Shown here piece after piece: positions 1-10,300 of a stretch of 64,000 nucleotides of DNA; within the stretch, counting starts at the first letter, position 1; each line of letters starts with the position of its first letter. The notes beneath the pieces were generated by a model that ran no database searches, was not told where the DNA came from, and saw only the letters and a list, made by a program, of their open reading frames with translations. The position numbers were made by a program, and so were the translations under genes. Source of the DNA: Podarcis muralis (lineage: Eukaryota); assembly GCF_964188315.1 (NCBI RefSeq), contig NC_135673.1:31806001-31870000 (forward strand). Reading direction: 5' to 3'.

Positions 1-190
1 CCTCTGCCTGTCAGAGACCCTGGAGAACTGCTGCCAGCCAGAGTTTACAGCAATAATGAATGTTCCAGGTCCCCTCCAGATGCTGCTACCTTCAGATGTA
101 GCAATCAGAGAGAGAACATTCTCTCTGGTAGTGCCCCATGAGTACTATGTTGGGCTCGTCTCATTCACTTGAGTTTTTAACAGTCACTAT

Positions 191-397
191 AGCACATCAA
201 AGTGCAAGTAGATATATAGGGAAGGTAAACAGCATTTCCGTGCGCTGCTCTGGTTCGCCAGAAGCGGCTTAGTCATGCTGGCCACATGACCCGGAAGCTG
301 TACGCCGGCTCCCTTGGCCAATAAAGCGAGATGAGCGCTGCAACCCCAGAGTCGGTCATGACTGGACCCAACGGTCAGGGGTCCCTTTACCTTTACC
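191..397 (+). mobile_element. Sauria SINE, 5'-truncated
   Basis: Body GCTGCTCTGGTTCGCCAGAAGCGGCTTAGTCATGCTGGCCACATGACCCGGAAG and (ACCTTT)n tail; reverse complement of the copies at 28057, 45105 and 53002. Confidence 0.9.
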
Positions 398-688
398 TAA
401 CTTCTATTGGTTTTGTTCCATTTTATTTTCTTACTGCCGATTAATTTTTGCAATTTCAAACTATAATCTTACTGAACGGCTTGAAGACCCAGAAAAGGCA
501 GGGATGGGGAACTTGCAACCTGCTGGATGCTGTGACCCGGCAGCATGGCCCAATGGTCAGAGATTATTGGAGTTGGGAGTTCAGCAACATCTGGAAGGTC
601 ACAAGTTCCCTATCCCAAGTATAATAATTTTTAATAGTTTTTCTTTTTTTCTTTTTAAATGAAACAAACCCAAAACAACGCAACATAC

Positions 689-746
689 CTTGCAAGCATT
701 TCTGGATTTCACAGGCATATTTCTGGCAGGGGTCTTTCTGTGCCAT
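689..746 (-). CDS. CMC4: CMC4 (Cx9C motif protein 4, p8-MTCP1) first coding exon; gene continues left of the window
   Basis: MAQKDPCQKYACEIQKCLQ closely matches human MPQKDPCQKQACEIQKCLQ; 58 coding nt; acceptor TCCTCTTCTTTTAG (exon starts 756, 10 nt before ATG); donor CAAG|GTATGT at 689/688. Confidence 0.95.
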
Positions 747-2198
747 GTCTGTGGAACTAAAAGAAGAGGAAAATACAACTGTAATTAAGAACTAAGGGAG
801 TGAGCTAGCAAGGCATCTCCTAATAATCCTGCTCACTGGCAAGGCCTGCTTTTCTTGCACAGCAAGGACTAATCCCTTTCAAGCACATCTAAGGCTACAG
901 TCCCAGAGCCCTCTGAAAAAGTGTCTCTGCCCAATCAAGCAAACCAGTGTGGAATACAATGTCTCGTGCCCTCCCATGTCACCCAAAATTCTGTCAAAGA
1001 TGAGACAAGAAACACCTATGATTGCTTCATTGGTCTAGTAAGATCCAGGTTCCTCCCTACCCACCCCTGCCATTTCTAGGGTGACACTTAGGACTATAGA
1101 TGCATCCTTTTCATTGTGGATTCTGCACTGAGAATAGGTTGGACTAGACTATTTCCAAGGTCCCTCCATGAGCAGCAGTATGGCCTAGAAGGCCCCCTGA
1201 AGAACCACCGGGGGGCAGGGGGAGAGATCACCAAGTAAGCACTGACGATGCTTGTTGAGACAGGGTTCTCCCCTCTGAGTCAATGTCTTGCATAGGATGA
1301 AGGGGGTGATGTAACTTCTGGCAACGCTGAAGCAGATTAGTACAAAGGTGGGGAACCTGTGGCCCTCCACAGATGTTGCTGCGCTACAACTTCCATCATC
1401 CCTGACCACTGGCCATGCTGGCTGGAGCTGATGGAAGCTGAAGATGCCACAGGCTCCCTCCCTCCTGGATTAGTAGAGCAACAAACCACATTTGCAACAT
1501 TCTGAACTGCTGAACAGCGAGGCGGCTTTTCAGACCAATTTAACTCAGCAAGAATGCACAGGCCACCCTGCTGGGTCAGAACAATGTTTATCCCACCCCA
1601 CAGTAAGAGCCCTGCCAAAGGCCTACCAAGCCCCACAATGACCGCGGTCAATCATATGTCTTCCGGGAAGCTCACAAGCAGGACATGAGGACAATAGCCC
1701 TCTTTTGCTTTTGCACCCCAGCAATTGGTTCAGCATCTTGTCCCCTGTAGTGGCTTCCCAGCCGCTTCCAGGAAACTAAACACGGAGAGAACACAATGGC
1801 AATCGCCGTGCCTTGTTGCGGACCCCAGCAATGCCCAGAAATCAGTGCCCTGACTATATTTCCAGTGGAGGGCAGCGGGGGGAGGGGGTGTTCCATCCTG
1901 CCTACCTAGAACTCCCCCTGTTATTTCAACTGGCCGCGGCACTCTTCTTCACTGCCTGTCCTAATCTCTTGGGCGGCAGCACTGCCAAGAGAGCTGCCTG
2001 CCATGCTCCACCACAGAGGCAGCGGCTTTTTAGTGCTGTGAGTTACCACATAAAAAACAAAACAGGGAGACCATCCTAGAGTCACACAGCTCCTGAAAGA
2101 CAAAAACCAGCATTAAAAGAACCGCCATGAGTGCAAAAAGTAAAGAGAAAGGAGGAAGGGGGAGACTGAGAGTGGGAAAACAGCAGAGCTCACCAGAT

Positions 2199-2246
2199 TT
2201 AATCACTTGGGAGGAGTTTCAGCAGCAGCTCTTCCACTCCCATGAT
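2199..2246 (-). CDS. MTCP1: MTCP1 coding exon 3 (IMGVEELLLKLLPSD*)
   Basis: Acceptor TTTTGTCTCTTGTAG; TAA at 2201-2199. Confidence 0.93.
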   Translation of the reverse strand: MMGVEELLLKLLPSD

Positions 2247-2765
2247 CTACAAGAGACAAAATAAAACATTCGTTGCATCCCAGTAAGATACTGGGTCATC
2301 AGTGCTGGAGTCACAGCTAAGCAGCTTGTATCTTTTTTTCCTGCCTGGAACCTTACCATTAAATGGTGTTCGATGTTCCAGATGCGAGAGTTACTGTCCC
2401 GGTACTGCTGTCCCTCTGAAAGCTGCCACATGTGGGGCAGCTGGGATGCAGGGAGATGGCTGGGGCACACCGCCTGGCCCAGGGGGACCCGGACTCTCCT
2501 GATCCGGGCTTTCACTGTATCTGCCTCCTGGGTGGAGAAGCAACCAAAAACAACAACGGAGAGTGGTGGGGGAGAGAACATGAGGTGTTGCTAAAAGGCT
2601 AAAACCAAAACACGAAAGCAAAAGGGTGCTGCGAGTATTCCTGCTTACCTCCTCTGATGCCACCAGCCATGTTTTCTGGTTCTCATCACAGTAGACGCCT
2701 ATGCGCCGCACCCAGAGGCGGACTGGTGGGGCCCGGGGATCACCACCTTCCTCTCCTTCTGCCAT
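2199..2765 (-). CDS. MTCP1: MTCP1 (p13 MTCP1, TCL1 family), complete, 111 aa, 3 coding exons: 2649-2765, 2357-2527, 2199-2246
   Basis: Spliced protein MAEGEEGGDPRAPPVRLWVRRIGVYCDENQKTWLVASEE/EADTVKARIRRVRVPLGQAVCPSHLPASQLPHMWQLSEGQQYRDSNSRIWNIEHHLM/IMGVEELLLKLLPSD* aligns to human MTCP1 (SQLPLMWQL, ELLLKLLPDD); all introns GT-AG, phase 0; lies inside CMC4 intron 1 as in human. Confidence 0.95.
2357..2527 (-). CDS. MTCP1: MTCP1 coding exon 2 (57 aa)
   Basis: Acceptor CTTCTCCACCCAG, donor ATG|GTAAGG, 171 nt. Confidence 0.95.
2649..2765 (-). CDS. MTCP1: MTCP1 coding exon 1 (39 aa)
   Basis: ATG in GGCATGG context, donor GAG|GTAAGC; exon acceptor CTTTGTTCAG at 2833-2831 with a CTAAC branch point upstream. 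Confidence 0.93.
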
Positions 2766-2780
2766 GCCCCGTTTCTCTTC

Positions 2781-2816
2781 CTAGGAATGCCCTCCCTTGG
2801 CTCCCATTCTACACAT
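2781..2816 (-). promoter_or_regulatory. Upstream ORF (MCRMGAKGGHS*) in the MTCP1 5' UTR
   Basis: ACCATG at 2816-2814 and AGAATGG at 2807-2805; TAG at 2783-2781, 15 nt before and in frame with the MTCP1 ATG. Confidence 0.65.
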
Positions 2817-5800
2817 GGTCCCCTTTGTCTCTGAACAAAGACATGGGATGAATTGTTAGCCTTGAAAAGAACTAGCACTGGGCATGGCAGCCAGGTGGAA
2901 TGCAACTTTCCTGAACTGTGAGAAGCATCTATTATTGTTATTATTCTTTTAATAGAAGGGTGGGGAACGCTGGAAATGTACAGCTGCCACAGTAAAATAG
3001 GAAGCTGTCTTGTTGGTCTATCTGAAGTCAGACCATTGGTCTATCTGGATCAAATCCTGAATGCACCCACCTTTGCCAAAATGGAGCCCCCCCCCCCAAG
3101 ATGTTTTGGACTATGATAGTCATCAGACCCAGGCAACACAAAATGCCAGTGGCTCCCCATGGTTACAGGATTTTCCGAATCCTATCTGGAAATTCCAAGG
3201 ACCTGGGACCTTTTGCATGCAAACCAGGTGCTGCATGACCCTGGGGCCTCAGGAAATTCTTTAGGAAAAATACAGCCCGCTTGAAAGACTCACAGCAATC
3301 TTTCTGGATGAAATGTGCTACAGAATCATGAAATTGGAGCTGTTTAATGGGACCTGCTGTCATCCAAGTTGGCCATAGAGTACTGAGGATGCATGCTGCA
3401 CAGCTTTCAGCAACTAGTGGCCTGTGGACGGAATGTGGTTTGCAGATGACTTAGCCCACTGATACAAATCTGTATCTATCCATTTGCTTTCCAGTCTTTT
3501 CCCCCATTTTGGTTCCTCTGTTTTCTTCTTTCACTCAATTCTCCATTCCAATCTGTAGCATCTTCTAGGAAAGGGGGGTGACCTCCCCCCACAAAATCCA
3601 AACTTGGTCAGTTTCCTCCACAAAACCTGGAAGTTAAGAGGAAGTACAACCGCTGCCAGTTCTCTCCTTTGCTCTTGCTCAAAATACTGCAAATACTGGA
3701 GAAGCTAGAAGTGCAAAACTATGGAAATTGTGAGGAGCAAATTGGCTGAGTCCCACCAACCCTGAGTACTAGAAGTTCCCCTTTCCCTATTTCAATTGAG
3801 TTGTCAAGCAGTGGTCACTGGCATAGGAAGATGAACATTATTTCAGCAGGGAAAGTCTATTCTACTTGGCAACTCACCACAGAACCCATGGTAAGACAAG
3901 TTAAAACCCTTGTACTGGGGCAAAGCTTTGTATAAAAAGGGTGACACTGATAGAGTGGGAGAGGAAGAAAAATTAGAATAGCACCCAGAAGATAGAATTT
4001 GGTTAGTTTCACATTTTGGTCATGATGGACACTGTGAAGGCTGGAGAATGCACAGGTGCTTATCACAACTCACAATATGTGTGTGCGGAATCACTCCTCA
4101 ATAGTGTGGGAAGTGCGGCAAGAGACGGTGTGAAAGGAAAGACAGCAGATTAAGAAGACAAAAGCACGTAGTTTTTCTCACAGCAGGAGCACTTCCTTTC
4201 CAGCGAATTAAGCCCCTAACTACAATTATGTCTTAAGCCAGGGGTAACCAACATAGCGTTGCTCTCCAGATGCAATGATGGCCACCAACATGGGTGACTT
4301 TAAAAGAGGATTAGACAAATTCATGGAGGGATAAAGCTATCCACGGCTACTAGTCATCAGCCAGATCCAGCAGGATGTTTTTATACATTGTTGGACTCCA
4401 ACTTCCTGTCAGCTCCAGCCAGCATGGCCAGTGGTCAGGGATGATGGAAGCAGTAGTCCAATTAGCATCTGGGGGACCCCATGCTGGCTACGTCTGCTCT
4501 AAGCTGAAAGGAGAACAAAGTCAGGTTCACATGCTAACATTCTGGGAGTATAAACGGAGGTTGTGGTGATGTGCTTAACTACTTTGGCACCAGCCCTTGA
4601 GAAATTTGTATCCACAGCCACATCATTGCAAAAGATGCATGAAGAGGATCGAGGCAGGAGGCTTCCCCCCACCCCCAAAATGACACAGCCAGTATAATTC
4701 CTCCAGCACTCCACAGGTATCCTTGGAATCAAACTGCTAAGCATACTATGTACTGTAGGGGGCTCAAAGCACACACAGACTAAGAGTCAGCGCACACCCT
4801 TGTTGCACGCAAACTGTATTGGCAGTAGCCCGCCCCTCCAAAAAGTTGACATGGGATCAAGATACTATCAGAGCCAGCTGGGACCCACTTACTCAAAAGC
4901 CCACAGTTTTCTTTAGTGATATAAGTGCCCAAGCTTTCGTTTCTGCAGCAAACTTTCCTAGCAGAACAAAGTACTCTTATTTCGTCATGGGACTATGTTC
5001 CACTTTGACTCAGAGAGGAGACCATGGCCAAGACTGGTGGGTTTTCCCCTCCCCCTACACCTGGGGGGGTCTTCCAAATAAGTTTTCTTTCCATGTAGAT
5101 AGAATCCGAGGGCTCAGCGTGCCTTGTTGCAGCATTCCCCCGCAAGTTCTATTAATATCATCAGCCCCTAAAAGTGAACAATTTTCATATGAAGAGAATG
5201 CGGCTTAAAAGTCTGTTTGTGCACAGCAAAGGTGTTGTGAGAGGGTGACCAATGTTGTAACTGTGCCACCAGAGTACGCAAGCCCTATTGTGATCCTCAC
5301 GGTGCTCTTTCACTCCTACAAGCAATCATAATATCTGTTACAAAGACAGGCAGCCACCCCCAGAACTGGAAACAGCCACTAATTTCCCCAGCATTTTAAT
5401 CCTGCTTGTCAGAGGAAACAAAATAAAAGTAAATAAAAGATCAGCAGGAGACATTACTGACTAGAAGATAAAACAACAGCAACCTCTCTGGGTCAGGAAG
5501 TGACTACCTGATCTGTGATGATGCCTTGTCTTTTAAGCCTCTGTTCCAAAGCTGAGCTTTTCACAACAGAATTTCTCCTTCATCACCCTCCAGCCAACTG
5601 CTTATCAGGTTACCAGAATGCAAAGAGGTGTGGCCTTGTACAGCTACTGCAAAATAGACACAGATGAAACTACCTTTTACAAGACAAACAGGAATGCAAT
5701 TGGTGATGGCAGAAGGGTGGTAATAAACCTGAACTACACAGAAAATCAGCAATCAAAGGAGACTGTAGTTTCCACAAAGCAGTTGATTATTGCAAATCAT

Positions 5801-7062
5801 ATCAAAACAACTGCTTAATGAAAGGTACAACATGAAGAACGAAAGCCTTGCCTTTCACTACTCCTTCCTACAAGTTGCTAAAATCATGGTCAACTTAAAT
5901 GTGCAAAATTAAGAAACTTCTTCCCCTCCCTGCTCCTGATTTTGAGGAGTATCAATGTAACAGAGACAGTAGGCAGTTTCTGGCCCAAAGAACTCCACCT
6001 AGAAAAGCCTCTTTCTAAGCAGTATAAGACCAGGAAGAAGGACTTGCGTATCTTTGTTGAAGTTAAGCTTCCTGGACTCAGACCAGATGCGTAAGTAACA
6101 ACAGAAATCAATGACATATTCCCAATGCAATGTCAAGAGTGAGGTCTTCTGGGGAAAGGGCCCGTTTGGAATATCCCACTTGGATTTCCACCGGCAGAGC
6201 TCTTACACCTTAGCAGACAGAAATCCAACAGGCAAATCTTGGCTCGTCGCTGCAGCACTATCCTAGAAGCTACACCTCTTGAGATTTCGCTTGCCCCCCC
6301 CCCCCCACACCACAGGAAAGTAGCCTGGTTGATCTAGCAGGAGTAGCAGCTGAAAAGAGAACATATTCATCTACACCCTCTAGGTTGCCAGTCAGCTCCT
6401 TCCTACGTTCATCACCTTCTTCTCCCCCCTCCCCCATTGAAAGAAGCTCTGAGCATCATCAGTACGAGACAGGCAGAAGCTCTACAGGTCCAGCTTTACC
6501 TAGTGCAGCGGAGGAGCTACGCCTGTTGAATTTCTGCCAGCAAAGGGAGCTTGGCCACTTCCTTAATCCCAGCTCACCCAAAGTTTCTCCCCCTCCTCCT
6601 CCTCTATTCCACCCACCCCCCACTATCCCGGGGGAGTCTCCATGGCAACAGTTCCCTCACTCTAGCGGTGAGGAAACTGTCCTGATTTGCACGCAGAAAG
6701 ATCTAGCACCCCACACCGCCTCCCTGGCGAGGCATGCCTCGTCCCGCTCGAGGAGTAGCCGGGCGCTACCTGGCCGCCAAAGTGGAGCTTCTCCGCCCTG
6801 CACTCGGCGGGTCTCCCTCTCCCTCCCGCTTCAGCCCCTCAGCCCCGCAGGCGCGCAGCTCTGCCCGATGCCGACGCCCCCCTTCGGGCGGAACCGACCT
6901 GGGCCAGCGACGCCAGCGGAACCAAAGAACGCTCCTTGCGCGGGGCTAGCCGGACACTTCTGCGGACGGACAGGAAGTCGGCGTTGTCCAGGAAACACCA
7001 TCTCCCTCTCAGAAGAGGCCTAGGCGGAAGGGATGCTCAGGACCGCAGGACCGCTTTCGCCC

Positions 7063-7358: not shown

Positions 7359-10300
7359 GTGAGGAGCGGGGTCTGCTGCTGCCGGGGAATACTGCGGGGG
7401 AGGGACCGGGGCAGCCGGGGGTGGCTTGGAAGTCCCGCTGGGTGCAGGGCGCTTACCTTCTGGGCGGATCCGTTACAGGCCGCAGCCGTAACCCTCACCT
7501 GTCAGTGGGCCGACTCCCCCACTGACTTCCACAGTGTAGATTGATCACAATATTTATCTCTATCAGGGCAGCTCGCAGAAAAAAATTAGAAGTGCTGAAA
7601 ACATAGGGGAGTCTTTAAAAATAATAATAATGAAGCAATAGAATTAAGATCAATTTATCTACATTAAAACATACAGATAACACTCCTGCAGGTGCTATGA
7701 AACACCCCTTCCACATTTGTAAAATCACAACCCTGTACTGTGGCAGCTCCTGCACTTTGGAACTCCTTGCTTATTGAGATTAAGCAGGCACCATTGCTGT
7801 ACTCTTTTCCACACCTCATAAAGCATTGTTACTTAGACACACCTACCCAGATTCTTAGAAAGCTGAGGTAATTTTAATCTGTGTTAGTATTATAATTATG
7901 TATGTTTTAAAGTATGGTTGTGGGACACACCCACACCCACACACCCAATTTTATTGTTTTTTCTTTTTGTAAGCCACTTTGAGGTGTTTTTTGTTTTTCA
8001 TAATCAAGCAGTGTATGGTTTTTTTGAAATAAATAATTACAATAAAAGCAGCACAGCAACGGACCTTTCCTAAAAAGCAGTCTGTTCCCAAAAGACTGTT
8101 GGAGCAAGAAAGACTGACATGTGAAGAGAGAAACAATGGGTTGTAACCATATTTATGAGGAAAGCATGCCTTTTTTGTTTTCAGATTATATTTCTGTATG
8201 TTATAGCGGGCATAATTTTAAAAAGCACACATCCTCTGTGTGGGAGAAGGATGAATTGCCTTTTAAGATGGATCATGCCACCTGCCAGTTTTAATAGAAT
8301 TTGTGTTAAAAAATTATTTTATAAATATGTTGCCTCATGAATCAGGATTAAATATGGCCCAGAGTTCTAAAGAATAAAAGCATCTTTATTTTAAGATGAC
8401 ATGTGCATGTTCTGAAGCAAGTTTCATGTTAGAAAAGGTGCACTCTTTCCCCATTTCTCTCACCCGCAGGAAAGGGATTTCTCTCTTGAACTGAGGCTTG
8501 CTCTCTGCAGGTTTTTCAAGTACTGTACATTTCTAAAAGCGGTGCTTTTAAAAAGCCTCTTGATTACTTTGTATAACTTTTAGTCATTCAGAATATTTTA
8601 ACCCGGGGTGGGGAACCTGGGGCCTAACAAGTATTGTTCTCCCAATTCCCATCATCTCACCCAGCATGGCCGATCATCAGGAATGATGTAAGCTATTGAG
8701 TCTGACCAACTAAATAATGCAGCACTAGGAGGAAATGACAGTATGACTTTAGAAATATTTTCATAGCTTGACCCACTTACTATTTGTTTGTACCGATAAT
8801 TAGGTAGTACTGGGCAACACTGAACATTTTCCTCAAGTACCTCTGCAAAGAGTTGCATCCTTAAAGTCTTTTCTTTCTTCTGCTCCATTGTTGGGGGAAG
8901 GGGCTCCAGGATTGACCACTGGCTGCATTCGTTGTTATGGTTGCTCTCCTAGATTGCAATTGCATGTCTCATGCAGCAAGTTTCAACAGGGACATGCAGC
9001 AGTGTTGCTCTTTTATGCCAGGGCTCTCAGAGAGCATGTGAATTGATAAAAAGTAGCATCTCTGCGTGTGTGCTCTGAGTAACTGCAGCCTGGCATCTCG
9101 AGTCAGATGCAGCCTGGCATCTCGAGTCAGATGGAAACACATAGTGTCTAGTCATACAGTGGCCAAAGTATCTCTCTGTTAAACTTTAAACTACGTGAGT
9201 CTGGGCTCCTGTCTTCAATATATTTTCTTCATTAAAGCTTTTGTCTGCTTAATATAATAAAAACCTCTAAGAAGCTTTCATAAAAACAATAGAAATACAG
9301 CAACATTAAATAAAATTTCCTAAAAACTAGATAAAAATGTAACAGTGTTAACAAATAAAGCTGAGTAGTGAACAAAACAAAGAATTTGGAAAGCTTGAGC
9401 AAACATAGGTGTTCAGAAGTGTTTAAAGCTTATTATTGTCTCTCAAAATTGCTCAAGGGAGGGCATTCCAGTGGTGGGTGCAATTACCAACAAAACCTGC
9501 TTCTGTGTTGTCACCAACACAGATTTTAAAAATCTTCTGATCATGGAGCAAGGTCTCCTCGGAAGAGCTTAGCTTGGCTTGATCTGTACCAGGGAAGGAA
9601 ATCACTTTCTTGGATGGCTTTGGACAGTCAGGTTCTTTGCAAAGGGTATTTGGAGGGATGTAAAGGCAGCTCTGCTCAGTTTTGAAAGCAAGTTTTCAGA
9701 AATAAATCTCTGCTTAAATGATCTTGCATGTGTGCGAGATGTAAGAATGAAGAAGGGTTTTTCAATGAGAGTAAGCATATTCTGGAATCACAATCTTATT
9801 GTGTTGCTGCTGCCATTGCATGCACATTTACCTGGAGTGAGCTCCATTTAATACAGTGGGATGCATGCCCAAGTAAGCATGTGAAATGTTGTGCTTCATA
9901 TGCTTTTCTTCATTTATCCCACAGGTTGGTGCTAGCCGAATAGTTCATATTCACTCCGTGATCATTCTGCACCGGTCAGATAAGAGAAAAGATCGTGTGG
10001 AGATTTCCCCAGAGCAGCTCTCAGCTGCTTCAACAGAAGCAGAGATATCCTTTGACAGAAATTATGGGGTAATAACACTTGAGTATTTTCAAGGCAGGTA
10101 GTCCTCAAAGGGCATGAGATTTTGGGAAAGTGGCTTAAATCACTTTGCAAGTGATGGCCTAGAAGGGAAATGTCCTGCCCATAGTTCTCTGCTTCTTTCC
10201 TTTGCTGTTCTGAAAGAGCATTTCATAATAATAGTGTGTGCGCATGTTTGAGATTGGCAAATGTAAGAACATGTGTATTTTTAAATGCATGACTAGGTTT

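What the first reader, a model, noticed from the sequence alone, without database searches (positions are those of the whole stretch)
2188..2204. Stop codon, poly(A) signal and 5' splice site overlap at the end of MTCP1: a possible cleave-or-splice switch
Seen: the minus strand reads GAT TAA ATCTG|GTGAGC. The stop codon is part of an ATTAAA hexamer (2203-2198), a strong donor CTG|GTGAGC starts 5 nt after the stop, and U-rich tracts follow (CTGTTTT, TTTCTCTTTTACTTTTT). By eye I found no other AATAAA/ATTAAA on this strand between the stop and the CMC4 acceptor at 756. Established: U1 bound near a poly(A) site suppresses cleavage, and a junction more than about 50 nt downstream of a stop triggers NMD. 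Inference: cleavage gives a p13-only mRNA with a tiny 3' UTR. Splicing to CMC4 gives a bicistronic mRNA whose next junction is 5+10+58 = 73 nt past the MTCP1 stop, so it would be NMD-sensitive. This 17-nt element could set p13 output without affecting CMC4.
Basis: partly seen in the sequence, partly recalled or inferred. Interest (0 to 1): 0.75.

Follow-up and report, generated by a model that had tools for sequence, protein, structure and literature searches.

The report
Conserved splice donor just after MTCP1 stop
The splice site five bases after the lizard MTCP1 stop codon is real, used and over 300 million years old, but it opens a small 3'-UTR intron on the way to a two-gene MTCP1-CMC4 mRNA, and the overlapping poly(A) hexamer looks like a by-product of the coding sequence, not a switch.

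Summary
The sequence is exactly as described. On the minus strand it reads GAT TAA ATCTG|GTGAGC, with ATTAAA at 2203-2198. There is no other AATAAA/ATTAAA down to the CMC4 acceptor at 756.

The window is Podarcis MTCP1/CMC4, head-to-head with BRCC3. RNA contigs from two studies, plus one raw read from a third, show the donor at 2194|2193 in use. It joins an acceptor at 2092 (101-nt intron), not 756. A 187-nt non-coding exon (2092-1906) follows, and its donor joins CMC4 at 756.

The same exon chain is fully spliced in an independent turtle mRNA contig that carries both ORFs. The stop-proximal donor, the short intron and the inter-ORF exon are present in all 13 sequences compared: lizards, snake, gecko, turtles, alligator, bird and platypus.

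ATTAAA occurs in only 6 of the 13. Five of its six letters are fixed by the Asp codon plus TAA. No RNA was seen entering the short intron and no 3' ends were seen there, though raw-read depth was low.

The cleave-or-splice switch is therefore not supported. Bicistronic output is supported, and the mRNA is still NMD-eligible by the 50-nt rule: the second junction lies 192 nt past the stop, not 73. This is a new instance of the known human MTCP1/CMC4 arrangement. No human sequence was fetched or compared.

The parts
2649..2830 (-). MTCP1 first coding exon. Acceptor at 2830, small uORF at 2816-2781, ATG at 2765, donor at 2649|2648.
   Evidence: Sequence. Joints 5508->2830 (X2) and 2648->2527 (X1, X2).
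2357..2527 (-). MTCP1 second coding exon (57 codons).
   Evidence: Joints 2526/2527-2648 and 2246-2357. 100% identical to Podarcis p13 MTCP-1, Pfam PF01840.
2194..2246 (-). MTCP1 last coding exon. It encodes IMGVEELLLKLLPSD, has the TAA stop at 2201-2199, and carries 5 nt of 3' UTR.
   Evidence: X1 contig record 4 runs through it, and both of its junctions are seen.
2198..2203 (-). ATTAAA hexamer overlapping the Asp codon and the stop. It is probably incidental.
   Evidence: It is conserved in only 6 of 13 orthologous sequences.
2188..2196 (-). 5' splice site CTG|GTGAGC, with the exon ending at 2194.
   Evidence: Joint 2194->2092 in X1 (depth 27), X2 (15.2) and one raw read of X23. Conserved in all 13 sequences.
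2093..2193 (-). 101-nt 3'-UTR intron (GT..AG), with its polypyrimidine tract and the acceptor gtttttgtctttcag.
   Evidence: joint 'skips 101, CT..AC (cut +1)'. The acceptor is invariant in the 10 sauropsid loci and similar in platypus.
1906..2092 (-). 187-nt conserved inter-ORF exon. It is non-coding, carries several short uORFs, and ends in the donor TAG|GTAGGC at 1906|1905.
   Evidence: X1 record 4 and joint 1906->756. 68-71% identical from lizard to turtle, alligator, bird and platypus, while the flanking intron does not align. Present in the spliced turtle mRNA L010.
757..1905 (-). 1149-nt intron between the inter-ORF exon and CMC4. It contains an interspersed repeat at about 1200-1600 and no AWTAAA.
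   Evidence: Joint 756->1906 'skips 1149, CT..AC' in X1 (31.6) and X2 (6.6). Hexamer scan.
689..756 (-). CMC4 first coding exon (ATG at 746, MAQKDPCQKYACEIQKCLQ). The next CMC4 exon lies beyond the start of the window.
   Evidence: Orthologous loci carry a PF08991 gene at the same relative place.

Best explanation
The 17-nt element is the end of MTCP1's last coding exon. The stop codon sits 5 nt before a constitutive, ancient 5' splice site.

MTCP1 is nested in the first intron of the CMC4 transcription unit, and its exons behave as optional internal exons of that unit. After the p13 stop, the RNA is spliced in three steps:
1. Across a roughly 100-nt intron (2193-2093).
2. Into a conserved 187-nt non-coding exon (2092-1906).
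3. From its donor into the CMC4 coding exons (756 onward).

The transcript then uses the CMC4 3' end. The product is a bicistronic p13-p8 mRNA.

Shown: the junctions, their conservation, and one complete bicistronic mRNA in a turtle.

Inferred:
- The first junction (5 nt past the stop) is NMD-silent, because its exon-junction complex would lie inside the ORF.
- The junctions at +192 and +260 nt make the bicistronic mRNA NMD-eligible whenever p13 is translated. That would keep p13 low.
- The short uORFs in the inter-ORF exon make CMC4 translation from this form inefficient.

The ATTAAA is a by-product of the Asp-TAA codons plus one variable base. It is not a working poly(A) signal.
For: - joints: 2194->2092 (X1 depth 27, X2 15.2, one X23 raw read); 1906->756 (X1 31.6, X2 6.6); 2246->2357; 2527->2648; 5508->2830. 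All have GT..AG ends on the minus strand.
- depth: one X1 contig (record 4) runs 2529..2357|2246..2194|2092..1906. Its depth alone accounts for the whole bin depth (27 x 99/200 = 13.4 observed in X1; 15.2 x 99/200 = 7.5 observed in X2). No contig therefore covers the short intron.
- in 12 amniote loci the stop-to-donor distance is 4-7 nt, intron A is 81-141 nt, the acceptor ...tttcag|G is kept, the exon is 169-212 nt, and the donor TAG|GTAGGC is invariant.
- Logan contig L010 (a turtle, 92-97% identical to Mauremys exons) is a spliced RNA with the MTCP1 ORF, TAA, CCTG|GAGC..., the conserved exon...TTTTAG|TTCTGTGGAT, the complete CMC4 ORF, and AATAAA near its end.
- no canonical hexamer is conserved between the MTCP1 stop and the CMC4 ATG. 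Sceloporus and Mauremys have none at all.
Against: - Contigs show presence, not proportions or absence.
- The raw RNA runs had depth below 2 here, so rare cleaved forms would be missed.
- The shared exon 1 (about 6770) lay outside the 6000 bases laid. The share of CMC4 mRNA that skips MTCP1 exons was therefore not measured.
- Unspliced contigs cross the 1906 donor (depth 6-9), so a form ending downstream of the 187-nt exon cannot be excluded.
- NMD sensitivity and translation of either ORF are inferred from rules, not tested.
- X1 and X2 are labelled 'RNA?' by guess. Their spliced joints and uneven depth argue for RNA.
Confidence: 0.8

Rival explanations
1. ATTAAA at the stop is a working poly(A) signal that competes with U1 at the donor 1 nt away. 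Cleavage gives a p13-only mRNA with a tiny 3' UTR, splicing gives the bicistronic form, and the ratio sets p13 output.
For: A canonical hexamer is present. A TGCTGTTTT stretch lies 14-22 nt downstream. There is no other AWTAAA before CMC4. The hexamer is kept in 6 squamates, including a gecko and a snake. Raw-read depth was too low to exclude rare ends.
Against: No starts or ends cluster was found, and no contig enters 2193-2093 in two RNA assemblies. The hexamer reads ATTAAT, ATTAAC or ATTAAG in Sceloporus, L011, Mauremys, L010, Alligator, Gavia and platypus, while the donor is universal. Five of the six letters are forced by GAT+TAA. The U-rich tracts are accounted for as the polypyrimidine tract of the 101-nt intron.
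Confidence: 0.06
2. The real splice-or-cleave choice lies one exon further on. The 187-nt exon can be extended past its donor (1906) into a terminal exon that ends at a non-canonical signal. That would give a monocistronic p13 mRNA, as the human annotation (MTCP1 exons 2-5 with its own end) suggests. Use of the 1906 donor would give the bicistronic form.
For: Unspliced contigs cross the 1906 donor (X1 5.95, X2 8.8). Human MTCP1 is annotated with an exon 5 beyond three coding exons (PMC7537572). Variant hexamers exist: ACTAAA at 2034-2029, AATATA at 1860-1855 and GATAAA at 1592-1587.
Against: Unspliced coverage continues evenly through to 730, as pre-mRNA would. No canonical signal is conserved in this interval in any locus. 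The donor TAG|GTAGGC is invariant across amniotes, which argues for regular use. No ends cluster was seen.
Confidence: 0.2
3. The joints are assembly artefacts of short-read contigs, and the region after the stop is simply an unspliced 3' UTR or intron.
For: Logan contigs can be chimeric, and X1 and X2 are only guessed to be RNA.
Against: The same joints appear in two studies and in one raw read of a third. All have GT..AG ends. The same chain occurs in an independent turtle contig. Both splice sites of each intron are conserved in the 12 genomic loci.
Confidence: 0.02

Closest known systems
Human MTCP1/CMC4 (p13/p8) locus at Xq28, with 'type B' transcripts carrying both ORFs
   Same: A TCL1-family ORF is nested in the first intron of CMC4, on the same strand and head-to-head with BRCC3. 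Transcripts exist that carry p13 upstream of p8 (PMC8566464, PMC7537572, PMC2276209; the description of type A/B transcripts by Madani et al. 1996 is from my own knowledge).
   Different: Here it is shown in a lizard and a turtle. The exact junction chain and a deeply conserved inter-ORF exon are defined. No own poly(A) signal for MTCP1 is evident, whereas human MTCP1 is annotated with its own terminal exon. I did not compare human sequence.
Splice-versus-polyadenylation competition (immunoglobulin mu secreted/membrane choice; U1 'telescripting'; the U1 site in the BPV-1 late 3' UTR)
   Same: A 5' splice site and a poly(A) hexamer lie close together, which is the arrangement in which U1 is known to suppress cleavage (established knowledge).
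   Different: No evidence that the hexamer is ever used. The hexamer is not conserved, while the splice site is.
3'-UTR-intron transcripts regulated by EJC-dependent NMD
   Same: Exon junctions lie 192 and 260 nt downstream of the p13 stop, which meets the 50-55-nt rule.
   Different: The junction nearest the stop (5 nt) is too close to count. Sensitivity to NMD was not tested. The downstream 'UTR' contains a second functional ORF.

Membership tests
MTCP1/CMC4 nested bicistronic locus | Upstream ORF of the TCL1_MTCP1 family | tested here: met
   the exon-2 query (57 aa) is 100% identical to Podarcis p13 MTCP-1 (111 aa), Pfam PF01840.
MTCP1/CMC4 nested bicistronic locus | CMC4 (twin Cx9C, PF08991) coding exons downstream on the same strand | tested here: met
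   The first coding exon 756-689 reads MAQKDPCQKYACEIQKCLQ. PF08991 genes lie downstream in 9 of the 10 orthologous genomic loci fetched; none was called in Alligator. The second CMC4 exon lies outside the window.
MTCP1/CMC4 nested bicistronic locus | Transcripts that carry both ORFs | tested here: met
   Joints 2194->2092 and 1906->756. Complete bicistronic turtle contig L010.
MTCP1/CMC4 nested bicistronic locus | Shared promoter and 5' exon, head-to-head with BRCC3 | tested here: inconclusive
   BRCC3 lies upstream on the opposite strand in the window (read by eye) and in 7 of the 10 fetched loci. The presumed exon 1 (donor near 6770) was outside the stretch laid. Only an intermediate exon ending at 5508 was seen joined to 2830.
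Functional poly(A) site in competition with a 5' splice site | Canonical hexamer | tested here: met
   ATTAAA at 2203-2198.
Functional poly(A) site in competition with a 5' splice site | RNA 3' ends 10-30 nt downstream of the hexamer | tested here: inconclusive
   table 6 lists none, and no contig covers 2193-2093. However, raw depth was below 2, and contigs drop rare forms.
Functional poly(A) site in competition with a 5' splice site | Hexamer conserved among orthologues | tested here: not met
   Present in 6 of 13 sequences. It reads ATTAAT, ATTAAC or ATTAAG in the others.
EJC-dependent NMD target | Exon junction more than 50-55 nt downstream of the stop | tested here: met
   The junctions lie at +5 nt (too near), +192 nt and +260 nt, from the coordinates.
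EJC-dependent NMD target | Transcript stabilised when NMD or translation is blocked | not testable with these tools
   Needs UPF1 depletion or cycloheximide.

The most novel reading that the evidence does not exclude
In sauropsids and monotremes, p13 MTCP1 may have no mRNA of its own. It would be made only from a bicistronic, NMD-prone MTCP1-CMC4 transcript. The inter-ORF exon, conserved for more than 300 million years (invariant splice sites, a purine-rich block, a conserved upstream ATG), would act as a regulatory bridge or 'poison' exon that sets how much p13 and CMC4 come from this form. In the squamates that carry ATTAAA, a minor cleaved form could add a lineage-specific layer.
Probability: 0.2. 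Interest if true: 0.5.

Novelty: new member of a known kind. Interest (0 to 1): 0.25.

Why it matters
MTCP1 is a T-cell leukaemia oncogene whose protein is not detected in normal human tissues (Madani et al. 1996, as cited in PMC7537572). This work shows three things across amniotes: its stop codon is followed at once by a splice donor, a conserved exon links it to CMC4, and no own poly(A) signal is conserved. Together these suggest that low p13 output may be built into the transcript architecture (bicistronic and NMD-eligible). That gives a concrete exon and concrete junctions to test. It also removes a tempting but unsupported 'switch' reading of a hexamer that the coding sequence creates almost by itself.

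Tried and rejected
1. A direct 2194->756 junction was not found in any of four runs.
2. Poly(A) ends near 2170-2185: none were listed and no contig lies in the intron. Depth was too low for a firm negative.
3. A conserved RNA structure in the 187-nt exon, as an IRES-like idea: RNAalifold gives -1.14 kcal/mol with a positive covariation term and one compensatory pair. Rejected.
4. A conserved peptide in the inter-ORF exon: only a start codon near its 5' end is kept, and frames drift with indels in T-runs (read by eye). Rejected.
5. Literature on MTCP1 and NMD: no paper held both terms.
6. Earlier notes of this scan near this place concern other features at 10045, 25460 and 26299. They did not bear on this finding.
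7. My intron-identity measure uses free end gaps and is crude. I use it only to say that the intron does not align while the exon does.
8. Two paper look-ups and one paper search failed on term syntax and were repeated.

Full report
**Observation.**
On the minus strand, window 2204-2188 reads GAT TAA ATCTG GTGAGC. The MTCP1 reading frame was rebuilt from three exons: ATG 2765 to 2649, 2527-2357, and 2246 to the stop at 2201-2199. It gives 111 residues. The 57-aa exon-2 stretch used as the search query is 100% identical to 'protein p13 MTCP-1 [Podarcis muralis]' (111 aa, Pfam PF01840), and that protein's sequence matches my hand translation of all three exons. So the window is a Podarcis MTCP1/CMC4 locus, with BRCC3 head-to-head upstream. 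ATTAAA occupies 2203-2198. On this strand the next AATAAA/ATTAAA is at 630-635, beyond the CMC4 exon at 756-689.

**What the RNA shows.**
I laid two raw RNA runs and two contig sets on window 1-6000.
- The donor after the stop is used. A joint that skips 101 bases, with GT..AG ends on the minus strand, links 2194 to 2092. It appears in contigs of two studies (X1 depth 27, X2 15.2) and in one raw read of a third (X23).
- The exon that follows is 2092-1906 (187 nt). Its donor TAG|GTAGGC is joined to the CMC4 acceptor at 756 (skips 1149; X1 31.6, X2 6.6).
- No 2194->756 joint was reported.
- One X1 contig runs 2529..2357 | 2246..2194 | 2092..1906 without a branch.
- The bin depths are reproduced by that contig alone: 27 x 99/200 = 13.4 for bin 2001-2200 in X1, and 15.2 x 99/200 = 7.5 in X2. 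No assembled RNA therefore covers the short intron 2193-2093.
- Any transcript cleaved 10-30 nt after the hexamer would have to enter that intron. The table of molecule ends lists none.
- The raw runs are stranded the right way, but their depth here is below 2. Rare cleaved forms cannot be excluded.

**Comparison with other species.**
I took the exon-2 peptide by reference, fetched nine sauropsid loci and platypus, and compared the stop regions.
- In every genome the TAA is followed 4-7 nt later by a GT donor. The donors read CTG|GTGAGC, CTG|GTAAGT, TGA|GTGAGT, CCG|GTGAGC, ATG|GTATGT and CTG|GTAATA.
- An intron of 81-141 nt follows. Its acceptor tttttgtctttcag|GAG is invariant in the 10 sauropsid loci aligned, is the same in L011, and is similar in platypus.
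- An exon of 169-212 nt comes next, ending in the invariant donor TAG|GTAGGC.
- That exon is 68-71% identical between Podarcis and turtle, alligator, loon and platypus. The intron beside it does not align.
- The hexamer is not conserved. The base after TAA is A in six squamates, T in Sceloporus, alligator, loon and platypus, C in the two turtles, and G in an unnamed squamate contig (L011).
- Because GAT (Asp) plus TAA already spell ATTAA, the hexamer needs only one free base to be A.

**Independent transcript evidence.**
A 1928-nt Logan contig, L010, aligns to the Mauremys locus in seven colinear blocks, the five exon blocks up to the first CMC4 coding exon at 92-97% identity; five of the six breaks coincide with introns and the last is an unaligned stretch inside the final CMC4 exon/3' UTR. 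It is a spliced RNA containing, in order:
- the full MTCP1 ORF;
- TAA CCTG joined to GAGC... of the conserved exon;
- ...TTTTAG joined to TTCTGTGGAT ATG;
- the complete CMC4 ORF (75 aa);
- a 3' UTR with AATAAA near the end.

The bicistronic chain seen in Podarcis therefore exists as one molecule in a turtle.

**Mechanism.**
*Shown:* the 17-nt element is the boundary of MTCP1's last coding exon. Its donor opens a short 3'-UTR intron. The RNA then passes through a conserved inter-ORF exon into CMC4.

*Inferred from established rules:*
- The junction 5 nt after the stop cannot mark the stop as premature.
- The junctions at +192 and +260 nt can, so the bicistronic mRNA should be NMD-sensitive when p13 is translated.
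- The several short ORFs in the inter-ORF exon should hinder ribosomes from reaching the CMC4 start on this form.

No canonical poly(A) hexamer is conserved between the MTCP1 stop and the CMC4 ATG in any locus. Sceloporus and Mauremys have none at all. This fits MTCP1 borrowing the CMC4 3' end.

One rival remains open: the choice between splicing and cleavage may lie at the 1906 donor, with the exon extended into a terminal exon at a non-canonical signal. Unspliced contigs cross that donor, and human MTCP1 is annotated with its own fifth exon (PMC7537572).

**Known or new.**
The human locus is described as bicistronic. [quoted passage not shown] The lizard and turtle transcripts are new instances of that arrangement. 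I did not find described:
- the conserved stop-proximal donor;
- the inter-ORF exon conserved from lizards to platypus;
- the lack of a conserved MTCP1 poly(A) signal.

These are details that gene annotation would show, and interest is modest. RNAalifold found no conserved structure in the inter-ORF exon.

**Limits.**
- I fetched and compared no human sequence or contig. What I say about the human locus comes from the cited papers or is marked as my own knowledge.
- The shared exon 1 lay outside the 6000 bases laid. The share of CMC4 mRNA that bypasses MTCP1 was therefore not measured.

Noticed in passing
window 2648-4327 (minus strand): The 'intron' upstream of the MTCP1 first coding exon is a single RNA contig at depth 26 in X1, the same as the MTCP1 exons (27). 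In X2 the unspliced form (12.7) exceeds the 5508->2830 splice (5.1). The turtle mRNA contig L010 is likewise colinear with the genome for 178 nt upstream of the ATG. This could be an internal start site for p13-containing transcripts or strong intron retention.
   Followed up: partly
window 1906-2092 (minus strand); L001-L009, L011 and L012 at the coordinates listed: The inter-ORF exon has invariant splice sites, a purine-rich block (GGACAGGCAGTGAAGAAGA), and a start codon near its 5' end that is kept from lizards to platypus, while the frame behind it drifts. No conserved RNA structure was found.
   Followed up: partly
window 2781-2816 (minus strand): An 11-codon upstream ORF (ATG TGT AGA ATG ... 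TAG) lies inside the MTCP1 first coding exon and ends 15 nt before the p13 ATG.
   Followed up: no
protein P0041 (Hirundo rustica): An annotated swallow isoform joins the MTCP1 exon-1 peptide in frame to the whole CMC4 protein through the CMC4 5' UTR (..LVAAEE-FLN-MSQKDPCQ..). This is a possible p13-N-terminus/CMC4 fusion made by skipping MTCP1 exons 2 and 3 and the inter-ORF exon.
   Followed up: no
window about 200-400: A SINE-like element (ggtaaagggacccctgacc...) has RNA word depth above 100,000 in both contig sets and hundreds of raw reads on both strands. It is a very abundant repeat in transcripts of this lizard.
   Followed up: no
window about 1200-1600, 4300-4430 and 515-600: Copies of an interspersed repeat produce cross-joints between these places in reads and contigs (tables 5 and 5c). 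These are repeat artefacts, not splicing.
   Followed up: no
window 5508 and upstream (minus strand): A non-coding upstream exon ending at 5508 (donor CAG|GTAGTC) is spliced to the MTCP1 acceptor at 2830 in X2 only. Its own 5' boundary was not determined.
   Followed up: no
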